This document shows positions 5 to 13,200 of a DNA stretch of 64,000 nt, piece by piece. The stretch comes from Macrostomum hystrix (lineage: Eukaryota > Animalia > Platyhelminthes): the NCBI GenBank assembly GCA_950097015.1, contig CATNEN010000035.1, positions 1,240,001 through 1,304,000 of the forward strand, in the 5' to 3' direction. A program made the position numbers and the translations under genes. The notes below the pieces were generated by a model. The model was not told the origin of the DNA and ran no database searches. It was given only the letters and a program-made list of their open reading frames with translations. Positions within the stretch are counted from its first letter, which is position 1, and each line of letters opens with the position of its first letter.

Positions 5-3000
5 CTGGCATTGTTGTCCACTAGGCTATCCGATTTTCTTGAAAATCGTTGTTGCTGACAAAATGCTCGAATTAAAGCTGCGCCAGCAATGGATTCGCTT
101 AAGTTCGTCAGGATTGGAGATCGGGAACTTGATTCTAAACGGCGACTCTGTCTGGAGACAGGCAAATAGAACACCTGAACTCCAGCATAGATCACAGCAA
201 GTGGCACCACAGCGGCCAGGAAGATTGGTGTGGTATAGGAGATCACAACTAGGCAGGAGATGGTTGTCATGAAGCATTCAAGGAAGTCAATGATCACTCG
301 TGGCAGCTCCCTGTCAATTACCTCCAAGTCCTTGCTGAATCTGTTTACAAGTCGGCCGGTCGGTGTTGAGTCAAAAAAACTCATCGGAACTCGAAACAGA
401 CATTTCAACAAAGCATCGTGTATCCTTCGAGAGGCTTTTAACGCTGAGTAAGTGTCCGTCAATGAATAGGCAATGACGAGAATAACAACTGCGACTCCGA
501 ATGCTCCATAGATTCCTGTATAATAGCCACTGAGCTCTCTTATATAAGCGGAATTATTAGGGTTGTTTATTATCGAGTTGTTTGAAAACACCGGATCTGA
601 AGTCCAGGTGGCCAGCCAAACGCTGCTCGCAACTACCACTGCTGTGTAGGTGAGATGTCCTAAAAGCACCAAAATGACCAGGTGCATTCCTCGAGAGGCT
701 ATGTAGAATAAGTAGGACTTCTTCGAGACACTTCCTGATTGGACAACTTCATCACTGGTTACCCGGCTGGTGTTCTCAGTCCTGTAGCAGAAATCAGCAA
801 AATCAAATTCAGTTTGACGTAAGCCACAAATGCCCCAAAGTGATCAGGCATCATGGAATCGCGAGTATAAAGGATGCAAAAACGGAGCCCATAAGCTACT
901 AAGTGATAAAACTTCTAGAACATTAATTAGTACAGTAGAACCCAGCCGCACTCATCTTAAGGATTCAGTGGGATAAAGGGAGATGCAATCGTGACTTTAT
1001 GGCAACTCAGAGCTCAAGAATGAACCCTAAATCACTGCTTCAATTCACAAACAATTCGTTCCATCATGTCTAATCGGGAAGTAACTTATTGGCTATAGAT
1101 GTGGTTTAATTTTGAGATCTCATTTTTCAATAGCACAACACACTAACCTTGATGGCTGGTGGGAAGGTGGGTTTTTCAAGTCGAACCGAGCAAGACTTTC
1201 AGAGTACTGAGTATCAGCTGAACTGTACGACGCTGAATAGGGAGGTGACGCTGCTCGTACACCCGGACTTTCACTCAGAGCTTCGTGACCAGAGCTTACG
1301 CGACTTGTGAGTCGCTGCAAAATCCGCGCCTTCTCAGCCTCCACTTCTTCGTCTTCTGCCTCATCCGGCGCAGCTTCTGAGATGTCTGCAACTGAGACGC
1401 TGGCATCGCGAGACCTGGCGGCCCGCTTCCGCTCAACGTCCTGCAGGAAGAACTCCTTGAGGAAGCTGGCAAAAGGGTCCGTCGTGATCCAGCAGATTCT
1501 CATAGCTTCCTTGCTCACTGATGCGACCTTCGTTGATAACGATGATCTCGTCCACATGAGGCAGCCAGTGGATTCCATGAGTGACCAACAGTCTGGTTTT
1601 GTTGCGTAGCAGGCCTGAGTTTCCAATTACCTGAAATAAAAATGCCGAGGCGTTTTATATTTGCTCTCGATAAATCCCAAATTATACACGGTACATAATG
1701 CAATACGAGCTAAAATTCATAAAAATTATATCAAGTATACAAAAAGAAGTCACGGTCGTTGCTTTAAAATAGAGCAGATGCCGGTTTTACATTTTTATAA
1801 GGAACTCTCACGCTATTAAATATTTTCTTGCCGACATGCGAGTCCACAGCAGCCAGAGGGTCGTCCAGCAGGTAGATGTCACTGTCCTGATACACAGCTC
1901 TGGCCAGACTGACTCTCTGCTTCTGTCCACCAGACAGGTTGATGCCGCGTTCCCCGATCTCCGTGGCGTCGCCCGCTGTCATTGTTTTTAAGTCCGTCTC
2001 GAGCTGACAGGTGCGCAGAACTTCTTCATAGCGCCTTTTGTTGAGCGGCTGACCGAAGAGGATGTTCTCCCTTACCGTCAAATTTTGAATCCACGCCTCC
2101 TGGGACACGTAGGCCACTGTTCCCTGCCGTTTTGAGCGGCAGTGAATGATTTTTAATGGCTATTTCGAGTGACGAAAACTCTCTGATGCAAACAATACGA
2201 ATTATCATAAATCCTGACTTATAGTAACAAGCTACATGAAGACATCAAGCGTAGACAAGACTAAAAATTACTCGTTATTAATCGTTAAACTCACCCGTAG
2301 AGTCACTCTACCAGAGTGTTTCACAGTCTCGCCCAAGACAGACTGCAGTAGAGAGGACTTTCCGCAGCCAACTTTGCCAACAATGGCGACAAGCTTTTTA
2401 GGAGGAACAGCGATGCTGACACTAAAAGTTTAATGCATTCGATTGGGACTATTTTAGCAATTTATTTAATGGTTTTGAAGGCGTGGAAATTTGCTATGAC
2501 TTTTGAAAGATGTGCAATTTTGTCGGTAATAGTTAATAATCATTTTTTCGAGTTTTGAAGTTCTAGTGCTGGTAAAAGTATTTAAAAGTATTATTCGAGT
2601 TTGAACTCATATTGGAAAGCAAATTTATTTTTAACGGCCCTAATGAAAATGCGACATTATAACAAACTTTCTAAAAAATTGAAAACGCGAAAATCTCACT
2701 TACTCTCTGAGCAGCATTTCAAAATCTGTTCTTTTCCAAGAAAACGATGCCGATTCCACTTCTATTGAGTTTTCATCTAAAATGAGAAAATTCGCGCGTG
2801 CCCAACTAAGTACCAGTCGTTATTTATCTGCGCTTATTTGATTGCGTTTTCGAGTTTAAGACTTACTTTCCTTACAAGGCAGCTTTAAGACGCTCGTTTC
2901 ATCAATGTCTTCCTCATGCAGGAAACTTTCGATTCGCTTTATCGAAACGTACGTCTAAATTATTGGATTGGAGCTAGGAGAGTGAAATAAGCCAAGTTAA

Positions 3001-10200: not shown

Positions 10201-13200
10201 ACTGGCCGCATACCCTGTTAAGGTCGAAGGGTGACACCTTTCCCTCCAGTCAGAGCTAGAGGTACCCAGTTCGACCAGAGGCATTGAATGGGTCATCCAG
10301 CGCTGTTGCCCATTTTGTCCGGCTGCCCTAGGGTCAGCCTTGAACACTCGCGGGACGTGTACCCATGGGTCAGCTGACGGGACAGCGTGGAGGGATTCCT
10401 GCACCCGAAGGCACAGGGCTCCTTCCTGCCAAGCCTGCTCAAGAAGCGACTGCAGGTGTGAAGCATCGCAGACCTTAGCCCGTGGGCCTGGACTGACTCA
10501 TACCTCACAGGCGTTGTGTCACGCCGGTGCGAGCATCTCGTAAAACTAACAAGGCGAATTATAAATAGCTAGTAACTTGTCAATCGATGCAACCAATAAG
10601 TCAGTATTTCATATGCACAAAGGTTGATAGTCATTAGGTCTAAGCGAAGTCCAATGGGCGGAAAACATAGTAAAACGTGTTCAGTGCTCTCTAAGAAAAC
10701 ACGAACAAAATCGCCTGCGCTGCTAAGTTGGAGTTGCGTAATGAGGGTGCATGGGTGACGAGTTTTAATGTAAAAGGCTTCAAAGCATATTGGAGCGCGA
10801 AACGCGCCGAAACTTTCATGATGATATTTGTATTTATCTTAATTTTACATGCCAAGCGAGCCACCTTACATGATAATACTCTTATCTCATACGAGTGTAG
10901 ATAGCCAAACAGCAATAGAAGTTACTGATGCATATTTTTCTTGGAACCGAGGCAGCACCGAGTCACTGCTCAAAAAGTGAGAATTTTTCAGAAAAAATCG
11001 TTTTTGTACTACAGTTGATCACTTTAAGTTCATTTGATTTGCTGATTGCAGTGTTAACATCACCGTGCCAAACGGAAAACTTGTGGCCATTGTCGGTAAG
11101 GTCGGTTCTGGCAAGTCATCACTATTGCACTCAATACTTGGGGAGACCGTCAGGATTAGTGGCAGCGTGGCTTTAAGGGTAAGGCATCCATTTTTGGATT
11201 ATTTATCTGTGCCAGAAGTCTAATTAAAAAACGGTTTACATATTATGTACTGTAATTTTAGATTCACGGGATATAAATAGTAAAACAGGTTAAAATAATA
11301 TTTCCTCAATGACAATTTAGGGCTCAGTGGCATACGTGCCCCAGGAGGCGTGGATCCAGAACCTGACCGTGCGAGAAAACATCCTGTTCGGCCGGGACTT
11401 TGACCAGACGCGCTACAACGAAGCGCTGCGCGTGTGCCAGCTGGAGAAAGACTTGCAGCTGCTGACCGCTGGCGACGCCACGGAGATCGGGGAACGCGGC
11501 ATCAACCTGTCTGGTGGACAGAAGCAGCGAGTCAGTTTGGCCAGGGCTGTGTACCAGGACTGCGACGTCTACCTGCTGGACGACCCTCTGGCTGCTGTGG
11601 ACTCGCATGTCGGCAAGAAGCTCTTCCACGAGGTCAGTGCTGATACACGATTGGCTGGTGGTGTTATTGTAACAATGTTGTTTGCTTCAAACCAGGGTTT
11701 AAACAGTGTTCTTATCAAACCTGTTAATGCACCTCGATTGCATACTTTAACAGCAATATGGTTCTCAGTCTAGGTACTATATTTTTTATGTATTTCAGGT
11801 AATTGGCAGTTCTGGTATTCTGAAGAGCAAGACAAGACTGCTGGTCACTCATGGAATCCACTGGCTGCCCCATGTGGACGAGATCATCGTTATCAACGAA
11901 GGTCGCATCAGTGAGCAAGGAAGCTATGAGAATCTGCTGGATCACGACGGGCCTTTTGCCAGCTTCCTCAAGGAGTTCTTCCTGCAGGACGTTGAGCGGA
12001 AGCGGGCCACCAGGTCTCGCGATGTTAGCGTCTCGCCATCGAGCCAACTTTCAATGCCAGCGGTAGCTGAGCTGGAGGACGATGAGTTGGCGGCGGAGAG
12101 GGCGCGGATCTTGCAGAGACTGGCCAGTCACAGCGGAGGTCAAGTATTTGACGAAAACCCGAGTGTTCAGGCTGCAGAGACGCAACTGTCTAACTCACCA
12201 CCAGCTCCTGAGCACAGGGGGCTGTCTAGTTCCGTTGGCAGCTACTGTTCAGATGCCTCGGATCGAATTGAATCAAAAAGGCCTCCTACCTTGCGCCAAT
12301 CATCAAGGTGAGATAATACTCGTAAAAGAGCATGAAACCATTTATTTTCTATTTTTAAATTATTGCGGTTATGGTGAGCATTTCAAAATCTTATTCGATG
12401 AAGTATGTTTCACTGAATAGTTTATTTTATTAAACTTTATTTTTACAGAACGTATCACGTAGCGCAAATTCCTAAGTCTTCTGCTGAAGTAACGAATTCT
12501 GGCCTAGGGACGGAAGATGATGGAAGACTAATTGAAGAAGAAACAATGGAGTCGGGAAGAGTGTCATTCAAGTCCTATGCTTACTACTTGACAGCTCGAG
12601 GTTTGCACTATATGATCATTATGTCCTTGCTGCATGCAGCATTTACGGCAGCAGAAGTGATCAGCAGCATATGGCTGTCCTCTTGGACCTCGGATCCGAT
12701 GTTTGCTAACTCCAGTGTCACAGGAAATCCCAACAACTCCGCGAGCTTAAGAGAGTTGAAACGACTATTACATTGGCATCTACTCCGTTTTTGGAGCTGC
12801 TGTCGTCATTCTGGTGGCTGCATTTGCCATCATTGAGGCGATTTCCTCCTTGCGGGCTTCTAGATTAGTGCACAACTCTCTGTTGACCAGTCTCTTCCGA
12901 GCTCCTATGCGCTTCTTCGATACCACGCCAACAGGTCGAATTGTGAACCGGTTCAGCAAGGACATGGAGGTGGTGGACCACGAGCTGCCGATGGTAATCA
13001 ACGATTTCTACGAATGTTTCATGTCAAGCCTCTCGTGCATCCTGGTGATTTCGTACACCACTCCGATCTTCATGGCTGCCGTGGTGCCTCTCGGCATTAT
13101 CTATGCGATAGTTCAGGTGTTCTATTTACCTGTGTCGCGTCAGAGCCGCCGCCTGGACTCCAAGACCCGGTCACCCATTTTGACGAACTTTAGCGAGTCC

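What the first reader, a model, noticed from the sequence alone, without database searches (positions are those of the whole stretch)
1395..12033. Patchwork homogenisation between head-to-head ABCC paralogs: shared TMD0/L0 and NBD1 tail, diverged transmembrane cores
Seen: the two inverted ABCC genes share all intron positions but alternate sharply between near-identity and strong divergence. Tract 1, 5456-~4880 versus 7368-~7945, is near-identical including two introns (intron 2 translates identically in the ORF track; intron 3 has about 3 differences). Intron 4 is unrelated (123 versus 244 nt). Tract 2, 4724-4272 versus 8220-8672 (453 bp), appears identical; an off-frame 78-aa translation is the same in both. 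TMD1 and TMD2 exons then differ at many residues. Tract 3, ~1590-1395 versus ~11836-12033, is again near-identical. Established: in long MRPs, TMD0/L0 relate to trafficking and folding while TMD1/TMD2 form the substrate pocket, and inverted repeats favour arm-to-arm gene conversion. Inference: an old palindromic duplication undergoes recurrent, domain-restricted conversion that keeps a common targeting module while substrate specificity diverges.
Basis: partly seen in the sequence, partly recalled or inferred. Interest (0 to 1): 0.75.

Follow-up and report, generated by a model that had tools for sequence, protein, structure and literature searches.

The report
Gene-conversion mosaic in flatworm ABCC cluster
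Three neighbouring, very old copies of an MRP-type drug-pump gene in the flatworm Macrostomum hystrix keep copying stretches of DNA onto one another, so their N-terminal module and ATP-binding domains are almost letter-identical while the substrate-binding membrane cores are deeply diverged; this is a clean example of a well-known process (interlocus gene conversion), not a new mechanism.

Summary
Between the two head-to-head ABCC genes, tract 2 is 453/453 identical, tract 1 about 97.6% and tract 3 about 95%. All 13 intron positions are shared, and the TMD1/TMD2 exons are saturated at synonymous sites.

- A third full-length paralogue (A) lies in tandem about 7.7 kb beyond the left gene, outside the window. 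It shares every tract.
- The largest homogenised block is NBD2 (about 810 bp, over 99% identical in all three).
- The closest pair changes along the gene. The head-to-head pair B–C is the least similar pair overall.

Introns inside the tracts are homogenised as well, and permutation tests give p<1e-4. This is recurrent interlocus gene conversion among three old paralogues, not a palindrome-specific process.

That conversion is kept out of the TMDs by selection, or preserves a "targeting module", is untested. A neutral, homology-limited model fits equally well.

In this assembly B carries two +1 frameshifts and C one; only A is intact (1,618 codons). The assembly is M. hystrix, PacBio CLR polished with Pilon, QV 42.8. 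With no sign of long-term decay, the frameshifts are either recent or assembly errors.

The scan has noted the same mosaic-conversion pattern at several other loci of this genome.

The parts
1..5568 (-). Exon 14 (NBD2) and the 2.1-kb intron 13 lie upstream of the window, and the gene ends at C35:1236836.
   Evidence: Exon model; paralogue search.
5569..7232 (.). Divergent 1.66-kb spacer between the start codons of B and C. It is not homogenised.
   Evidence: No inverted repeat was found inside it.
7233..14448 (+).
7365..7919 (+). Tract 1 in C (end of intron 1, E2, intron 2, E3, intron 3, most of E4; this is TMD0). It is 96-99% identical in all three genes.
4904..5459 (-). Tract 1 in B.
7976..8219 (+). 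C intron 4 (244 nt), unrelated to the 123-nt intron 4 of A and B. It forms an island of non-homology between tracts 1 and 2.
4725..4847 (-). B intron 4 (123 nt). It differs from A's intron 4 by 1 mismatch, so for the A-B pair tracts 1 and 2 form one continuous block of about 1.3 kb.
8208..8672 (+). Tract 2 in C (last TMD0 helix plus the L0 lasso, roughly MRP1 residues 167-300). It is 99.5% identical in all three genes up to 8626; B=C continues to 8672.
4272..4736 (-). Tract 2 in B.
11317..12008 (+). A=C tract (E11 covering Q-loop, signature and Walker B; intron 11 at 89%; start of E12). B is diverged here up to about 11832.
   Evidence: (pS for A-C is 0.07 against 0.48-0.52 for pairs involving B).
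11832..12008 (+). Tract 3 in C (end of NBD1, H-loop region, roughly MRP1 residues 810-877). It is about 97% identical in all three genes.
1244..1597 (-). Tract 3 in B. Beyond the all-three part (1420-1597) B stays 98.6% identical to A only, running into the unconserved NBD1-TMD2 linker.
13604..14410 (+). NBD2 tract in C: 807 columns, 99.1-99.4% identical in all three genes, ending just before the stop codon at 14446.
3317..3317 (-). +1 insertion in B exon 7 (TMD1) relative to A and C; a frameshift.
1474..1474 (-). +1 insertion (TTT to TTTT) in B exon 12, inside the otherwise identical A=B tract; a frameshift.
12759..12759 (+). +1 insertion (AA to AAA) in C exon 13 (TMD2) relative to A and B; a frameshift.
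8673..11316 (+). Diverged core 1 of C (3' part of E5 through E10: TMD1 plus the Walker-A part of NBD1). pS is 0.6-0.97 in all pairs and the introns are unalignable.
12188..13561 (+). Diverged core 2 of C (linker end, E13 = TMD2, first ~55 codons of E14). pS is 0.4-1.0 in all pairs.

Best explanation
A three-gene cluster of long MRP-type ABCC transporters lies on contig C35 of Macrostomum hystrix. Gene A (minus strand) is at 1223070-1229166, gene B (minus) at 1236836-1245568, and gene C (plus) at 1247233-1254448. The cluster arose by ancient duplications and has since undergone repeated, short (about 0.2-1.3 kb), non-reciprocal interlocus gene conversions between all three pairs.

These events have homogenised five blocks:
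- TMD0;
- the last TMD0 helix plus L0;
- the C-terminal half of NBD1 (A and C only);
- the end of NBD1 (all three, extended into the linker for A and B);
- NBD2.

Together these cover about 46% of codons. TMD1, the Walker-A part of NBD1, TMD2 and most introns have escaped conversion and are saturated at silent sites.

Shown: the mosaic itself, its significance, that introns are included, and that no outside donor exists in the assembly.

Inferred: the patchwork persists because conversion needs local homology. Blocks that are regularly converted stay convertible, while blocks that once escaped, or are flanked by indel-rich introns and transposon insertions, become refractory. Selection against conversions that would scramble specialised TMDs possibly adds to this.

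Orientation (head-to-head versus tandem) plays no visible role.
For: - Three full-length copies and no further fragments in 104 kb.
- Identical 14-exon structure in all three.
- Family and domains confirmed exon by exon: ABC_membrane twice, ABC_tran twice, best solved relatives MRP1/ABCC2/ABCC3, five N-terminal hydrophobic helices.
- Sliding identity and pS alternate between about 0 and saturation with sharp edges.
- Introns 2 and 3 are homogenised in all three genes, intron 4 in A-B, and intron 11 in A-C.
- The nearest pair changes along the gene: all three, then A=B, then B=C, then none, then A=C, then all three, then A=B, then none, then all three.
- Permutation tests gave 0 of 10,000 permutations reaching the observed run for each pair, and the longest invariant run is 347 columns against a maximum of 43 in shuffles.
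- Exon 1 and the upstream DNA are diverged, so each tract is bounded on both sides. That means conversion, not unequal crossover.
- The TMD cassettes of A, B and C are each other's nearest relatives (61-80% aa). The next locus in the genome is at 44-46%.
- Copy-specific transposon and satellite insertions sit only in non-homogenised introns and spacers.
- Precedent in ABC pumps: C. krusei ABC11-ABC1 are kept at 98% identity by recurrent gene conversion (PMC6053246).
Against: - No read-level validation was possible. The assembly was polished with short reads (Pilon), which can over-homogenise paralogous stretches that are already very similar (PMC10468722), so the exact 100% values may be slightly inflated.
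- No orthologues from sister species were reachable (best outside hits about 60% identity). The age of the duplication and the post-speciation timing of conversions are therefore inferred only from saturation.
- The direction of transfer is unknown.
- The GC3 signal expected from biased conversion is not specific.
Confidence: 0.88

Rival explanations
1. One reading: conversion is real but is confined to domains by selection. It would be favoured in TMD0/L0 (and the NBDs) to keep a common trafficking or engine module, and purged in TMD1/TMD2 so that substrate specificities can diverge.
For: Homogenised blocks coincide roughly with TMD0, L0 and the NBDs, and diverged blocks with TMD1 and TMD2. 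TMD0 is normally the least conserved part of ABCCs (general knowledge), so its identity is not explained by high ancestral conservation. The cores show long-term purifying selection, with pN 0.16-0.23 against saturated pS.
Against: - Tract ends differ between pairs and often lie inside exons or domains (8626 vs 8672; 12008 vs 12187; 13562-13604).
- The Walker-A exon of NBD1 is not homogenised.
- The unconserved linker is homogenised in A-B.
- Introns are co-converted.
- Three 5' tract edges sit within 35 nt of an intron-exon junction next to unalignable intron DNA, as expected if loss of homology stops the tract.
- B and C carry frameshifts in this assembly.
- No test of selection was possible without population or orthologue data.
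Confidence: 0.25
2. Assembly or polishing artefact: the identical tracts are consensus collapses, or Pilon homogenisation of paralogues that in reality differ.
For: The assembly is PacBio CLR/canu, polished with Arrow and Pilon. Short reads multi-map in stretches that are over 97% identical. One frameshift lies inside an identical tract.
Against: - Polishing cannot turn 65% identity into 100%.
- The tracts still carry copy-specific differences and an indel.
- Each tract is embedded in unique, copy-specific flanks, introns and transposon insertions that long reads would span.
- Different pairs share different tracts.
- Merqury QV is 42.8 and k-mers are mostly single-copy (PMC10468722).
Confidence: 0.04
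3. Young duplicates whose TMD cassettes were replaced from other, distant ABCC genes. Under this reading the identical parts show the true young age and the cores are imports.
For: In principle a mosaic can be read either way.
Against: No other locus in the assembly is closer than 44-46% aa to any TMD cassette, whereas A, B and C are 61-80% identical to each other there. All intron positions and phases are shared. Exon 1, the UTRs and the spacers are diverged as well.
Confidence: 0.03
4. Purifying selection alone keeps the shared blocks identical, with no DNA transfer.
For: NBDs are the most conserved parts of ABC proteins.
Against: pS is about 0 over hundreds of codons while the neighbouring codons are saturated. 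Introns 2, 3, 4 and 11 are homogenised. The same block is identical in one pair and diverged in another: in E11, pS is 0.07 for A-C against about 0.5 for pairs involving B.
Confidence: 0.01

Closest known systems
Recurrent ectopic gene conversion in the Candida krusei (Pichia kudriavzevii) PDR efflux-pump family ABC11-ABC1(-ABC12). Source: Lamping et al. 2017, Genetics 205:1619, as summarised in PMC6053246.
   Same: Both are neighbouring full-size ABC efflux-pump paralogues that are repeatedly homogenised by interlocus gene conversion, in a multi-member family with ectopic exchange.
   Different: The yeast genes are ABCG/PDR type, intronless and about 98% identical over essentially the whole gene, with array contraction and expansion by crossover. 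Here the genes are ABCC, carry 13 introns, have about half of each gene saturated, and one member is inverted. I could not read the 2017 paper itself (it is not held), so details beyond PMC6053246 are from memory.
Human ABCC6 and its partial pseudogenes ABCC6P1/P2. The topic appears in PMC4444165 and PMC2329642, neither of which I read for this point, so the details are from memory.
   Same: Both involve an ABCC gene exchanging sequence with nearby duplicated copies, some of them non-functional. The 5' (TMD0-side) exons are involved.
   Different: The human copies are young, truncated segmental duplicates that are over 98% identical throughout. Here all three copies are full-length and ancient.
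Classical mosaic interlocus gene conversion in small gene clusters (globins, RHD/RHCE, opsins, CYP21). Theory: homology-dependent escape from conversion, Walsh 1987; Teshima and Innan 2004. All cited from memory.
   Same: Short tracts bounded by diverged sequence, introns co-converted, the nearest pair changing along the gene, and converted blocks remaining convertible.
   Different: Nothing mechanistically different was seen. The contrast here, about 0 against saturated pS within single exons, is unusually strong.
Other mosaic-conversion loci noted by this scan in the same genome (SLC23, EGFR, HELZ2-like, ovo, GABA-B-like, nAChR and TEP; HHAT is a first-reader note only).
   Same: Old neighbouring paralogues, in tandem or inverted, with patches of about 99% identity including introns.
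   Different: They are different gene families. Those notes are unchecked by me, apart from the organism identification.

Membership tests
ABCC / long MRP-type ABC transporter | Two ABC_membrane transmembrane domains, each followed by an ABC_tran ATPase domain, on one polypeptide. | tested here: met
   Pfam, exon by exon. E7 and E13 match ABC_membrane (1e-20 and 9e-32). E11 and E14 match ABC_tran (6e-13 and 9e-26). The order along the gene comes from the exon model.
ABCC / long MRP-type ABC transporter | An extra N-terminal TMD0 (five helices) plus the L0 lasso linker. | tested here: met
   Five hydrophobic 19-mers in residues ~34-188. Exon 5 aligns to human MRP1 residues 167-406, E=3e-18. Pfam has no hit on the TMD0 exons, so TMD0 rests on hydropathy and position only.
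ABCC / long MRP-type ABC transporter | Closest characterised relatives are ABCC1/2/3-type proteins. | tested here: met
   The best solved chains are MRP1, ABCC2 and ABCC3 (E14: 1e-149). Database hits are named MRP1 or ABCC3-like.
ABCC / long MRP-type ABC transporter | An intact open reading frame. | tested here: inconclusive
   A is intact at 1,618 codons. B has two +1 frameshifts and C has one. Whether these are real or assembly errors cannot be decided without reads.
Interlocus (ectopic) gene conversion | Near-identical tracts bounded on both sides by diverged paralogous sequence. | tested here: met
   Exon 1 and upstream DNA, the cores and the 3' UTRs are all diverged.
Interlocus (ectopic) gene conversion | Silent sites and introns homogenised together with replacement sites. 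| tested here: met
   pS is about 0 in tracts against 0.7-0.9 in cores. Introns 2, 3, 4 and 11 are homogenised.
Interlocus (ectopic) gene conversion | Segment-wise incongruence of relationships, with significance against permutation. | tested here: met
   The nearest pair changes along the gene, and 0 of 10,000 permutations reached the observed run for each pair.
Interlocus (ectopic) gene conversion | In trees with orthologues, tracts group by species while cores group by orthology. | not testable with these tools
   No close relatives were reachable; the best outside hits are about 60% identical. No eukaryote genome collection was available.
GC-biased gene conversion | GC (GC3, introns) raised specifically in converted tracts. 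| tested here: inconclusive
   GC3 is 0.75 in tracts against 0.50-0.56 in cores (p=2e-15). However, unlinked ABCC genes show GC3 of 0.60-0.89 without any known conversion. The two pair-specific tracts disagree with each other.
Unitary or duplicated pseudogene (for B and C) | Disabling mutations together with relaxed constraint. | tested here: inconclusive
   Frameshifts are present. There are no internal stops once the three inserted bases are skipped, and no protein-level rate acceleration against A.

The most novel reading that the evidence does not exclude
The locus may be one instance of a genome-wide syndrome. Macrostomum hystrix, a self-fertilising flatworm, may have an unusually high or unusually persistent rate of short-tract interlocus gene conversion between ancient neighbouring paralogues. 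That would produce 'modular concerted evolution', in which catalytic or engine modules stay identical while specificity modules diverge, in many families: here ABCC, and elsewhere (per the scan's notes) SLC23, EGFR, TEP, nAChR, GABA-B and ovo. If the module boundaries recur more often than homology alone predicts, selection would be shaping where conversion is tolerated.
Probability: 0.2. Interest if true: 0.6.

Novelty: new member of a known kind. Interest (0 to 1): 0.3.

Why it matters
The locus is a very clean, three-way natural example of how gene conversion and divergence partition a multidomain transporter. About 46% of codons are kept (near-)identical, while the substrate-binding TMDs are as different as in unrelated family members.

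It has practical consequences. Phylogenies, orthology calls and dS-based dating of Macrostomum ABCC genes will be wrong unless tracts are masked. Short-read mapping and polishing in this cluster are unreliable.

The mechanism is not new. It would gain interest only as part of a genome-wide pattern in M. hystrix, or if selection on tract placement were demonstrated.

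Tried and rejected
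- **Orthologues for per-domain trees.** The word-index search with the NBD2 exon found nothing above 62% identity in the visible length range (192-612 aa). It found neither the species' own proteins nor any congener beyond one 60% M. lignano fragment, so the test was abandoned. I did not run the large representative search: the family was not in doubt, and 50% clustering would merge the orthologues I needed.
- **GC-biased conversion.** It looked promising but failed the control with unlinked ABCC genes.
- **Long-standing pseudogenes.** I tested whether B and C have been pseudogenes for a long time with relative-rate tests. There was no signal.
- **Outside donors for the TMD cassettes**: none found.
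- **Extra ABCC fragments in 104 kb**: none, apart from a weak unrelated ABC hit at window 52170-52619.
- **Joined protein left out.** The joined, spliced protein was never sent to any search or folding tool. All database searches were exon by exon, by reference. Exons were joined only inside scripts, for codon alignment and dN/dS. The three inserted bases were skipped there for analysis only.
- **Human-DNA rule.** The contig is not human (M. hystrix), so that rule did not apply.

Full report
**Source.** The window is G000:C35:1240001-1304000 of a 220,453,370-bp, 42-contig assembly. These numbers are exactly those of the Macrostomum hystrix assembly of Wiberg et al. 2023. That assembly used PacBio CLR and canu, with haplotigs purged, and was polished with Arrow and Pilon; Merqury QV is 42.8 (PMC10468722). 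It is a free-living flatworm, not human.

**Checking the observation.** An inverted repeat with patchy identity links 1-5459 and 7365-13288.
- Tract 1: 577/578 nt, 11 mismatches and 3 gap columns.
- Tract 2: 453/453 identical.
- Tract 3: 196/198 nt, 6 mismatches and 4 gap columns.
- Intron 2 differs by one gap and intron 3 by 3 mismatches. Intron 4 is unrelated (123 vs 244 nt).

Searching the whole assembly with the tracts and with the last exon found a third full-length copy. I fetched C35:1200001-1240000 and compared three genes:
- A: minus strand, 1223070-1229166.
- B: minus strand, 1236836-1245568.
- C: plus strand, 1247233-1254448, which is window 7233-14448.

No further ABCC fragment exists in these 104 kb.

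**Gene models.** I derived models from reading frames, splice-site enumeration and three-way agreement. Each gene has 14 exons and 13 GT-AG introns at the same positions and phases.

**Family and domains.** Pfam and solved-structure searches were done exon by exon, by reference:
- E7 and E13 match ABC_membrane. E11 and E14 match ABC_tran.
- E5 aligns to human MRP1 residues 167-406, which is the last TMD0 helix, the L0 lasso and the first TMD1 helices.
- E12 residues 1-68 align to MRP1 810-877, the end of NBD1.
- E14 aligns to MRP1 1189-1530, which is TM17 plus NBD2.
- The first ~190 residues contain five hydrophobic helices, consistent with a TMD0.

These are long MRP-type ABCC genes. The joined protein was not sent to any search or folding tool.

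**The mosaic.** Sources are a three-way alignment with sliding identity, codon-wise pS/pN and tract calling. In C window coordinates:

| Segment | Content | Relationship |
|---|---|---|
| 7233-7364 | E1, intron 1 | diverged (pS about 0.7) |
| 7365-7919 | TMD0 exons 2-4 with introns 2 and 3 | 96-99% identical in all three |
| intron 4 and end of E4 | | A=B (1 mismatch in 123 nt); C unrelated |
| 8208-8626 | last TMD0 helix plus L0 | 99.5% in all three; B=C continues to 8672 |
| 8673-11316 | TMD1 and the Walker-A exon | all pairs at pS 0.6-0.97; introns unalignable |
| 11317-12008 | E11, intron 11, start of E12 | A=C (pS 0.07; intron 11 at 89%); B diverged (pS about 0.5) up to 11832 |
| 11832-12008 | end of NBD1 | about 97% in all three |
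| 12009-12187 | unconserved linker | A=B 98.6%; C diverged |
| 12188-13561 | TMD2 and start of E14 | all diverged |
| 13604-14410 | NBD2 | 99.1-99.4% in all three, ending at the stop codon |

By codons, 512 lie in all-three tracts, 238 in pair-only tracts and 876 are never homogenised.

The pattern is far beyond chance. For every pair, 0 of 10,000 permutations of the variable sites reach the observed run. The longest invariant run is 347 columns, against at most 43 in shuffles.

**Interpretation.**
- Silent sites and introns are homogenised, so protein-level selection cannot be the cause.
- Every tract is bounded on both sides by diverged DNA, and exon 1 and the upstream sequence are diverged. 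The events are therefore non-reciprocal conversions, not unequal crossovers.
- Different pairs share different tracts with different end points, so many independent events occurred.
- The TMD cassettes of A, B and C are each other's closest relatives (61-80% aa). The next locus in the genome is at 44-46%. The cores are therefore old in-situ divergence, not imports.
- Exclusive similarity is greatest for A-B (629 sites) and A-C (595 sites), and least for the head-to-head pair B-C (373 sites). The palindromic arrangement is therefore not what drives the exchange.
- Copy-specific insertions lie only in non-homogenised introns or spacers. They are a ~385-bp dispersed repeat in C intron 8, a mariner in B intron 13, and a 27-bp satellite and an RT fragment between A and B. 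This argues that the copies were assembled independently, and fits the idea that loss of homology stops tracts.
- Three 5' tract edges lie within 35 nt of an intron-exon junction next to unalignable intron DNA. Other edges fall inside exons.

**Why a patchwork?** The data fit the neutral, homology-dependent model: converted blocks remain convertible, and escaped blocks become refractory. I cite that theory from memory. Four observations argue against a strict domain rule:
- the Walker-A exon is not shared;
- the linker is shared in one pair;
- tract ends differ between pairs;
- the largest shared block is NBD2.

**Frameshifts.** A reads through at 1,618 codons. B has +1 insertions in E7 (window 3317) and E12 (window 1474, TTT to TTTT, in the middle of a tract otherwise identical to A). 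C has a +1 insertion in E13 (window 12759).
- When these three bases are skipped, no internal stop remains.
- Relative-rate tests with an unlinked ABCC gene as outgroup show no acceleration of B or C.
- The disruptions are therefore either recent or residual CLR insertion errors.
- At QV 42.8, about one error is expected in the ~14.5 kb of CDS. The one inside the A=B tract is the most suspect, because short-read polishing is ambiguous there.
- I estimate roughly 60% that at least one of B and C is truly disrupted.

**GC.** GC3 is higher in tracts (0.75) than in cores (0.50-0.56; p=2e-15). However, unlinked ABCC genes have GC3 of 0.60-0.89, and the two pair-specific tracts disagree with each other. 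GC-biased conversion is not demonstrated, and the low GC3 of the cores is unexplained.

**Comparison with known cases.** Recurrent gene conversion between neighbouring ABC efflux pumps is documented for C. krusei ABC11-ABC1 (PMC6053246, citing Lamping et al. 2017, which I could not read). Exchange between ABCC6 and its pseudogenes is a human parallel, cited from memory. The scan's earlier notes report similar mosaics at several other loci of this genome. I treat them as leads only. The one claim I verified independently is the organism. I also confirmed the mariner of note s1-085081 by Pfam.

**Verdict.** This is a new member of a known kind, of modest interest on its own. It would be more interesting if a genome-wide excess in M. 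hystrix, or selection on tract placement, were shown.

Noticed in passing
L009:8235-9389 (minus strand; C35:1238235-1239389), inside intron 13 of gene B, just before the window start: An open 385-aa mariner/Tc1-type transposase ORF (Pfam Transposase_1, DDE_3, HTH_48).
   Followed up: partly
window 10151-10535 (C intron 8): A dispersed repeat of about 385 bp, with at least 170 matches genome-wide at 93-96% identity. In many other copies its first ~116 bp is tandemly reiterated with a ~97-bp period. It makes C intron 8 939 nt long against 82-90 nt in A and B.
   Followed up: partly
L009:1-3294 (C35:1230001-1233294), between genes A and B: A 27-bp satellite, about 121 copies at 92% match (consensus CCTATGCAGAGCTGTCAGGGACACATT). 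It is open in several frames and so generates spurious long ORFs.
   Followed up: partly
L009:5347-6177 (plus strand): A reverse-transcriptase fragment (Pfam RVT_1, 1.7e-11) of a retroelement in the A-B spacer.
   Followed up: partly
window 4725-4847 (B intron 4) and its counterpart in gene A: The 123-nt intron 4 of A and B is a multiple of three and free of stops in the coding frame. Retaining it would add 41 residues between TMD0 helices 4 and 5 without breaking the frame. C's 244-nt intron 4 is not like this.
   Followed up: no
cluster-wide compared with C34:1308561-1313579 and three C38 loci (L010-L016): The never-homogenised exons of the cluster have much lower GC3 (0.50-0.56) than exons of unlinked ABCC genes of the same genome (0.60-0.89). 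The cause is unknown.
   Followed up: partly
window 52170-52619 (plus strand): A weak ABC-ATPase-like match (30% identity to NBD1 of gene A, E=7e-7), probably a different ABC family gene further along the window.
   Followed up: no
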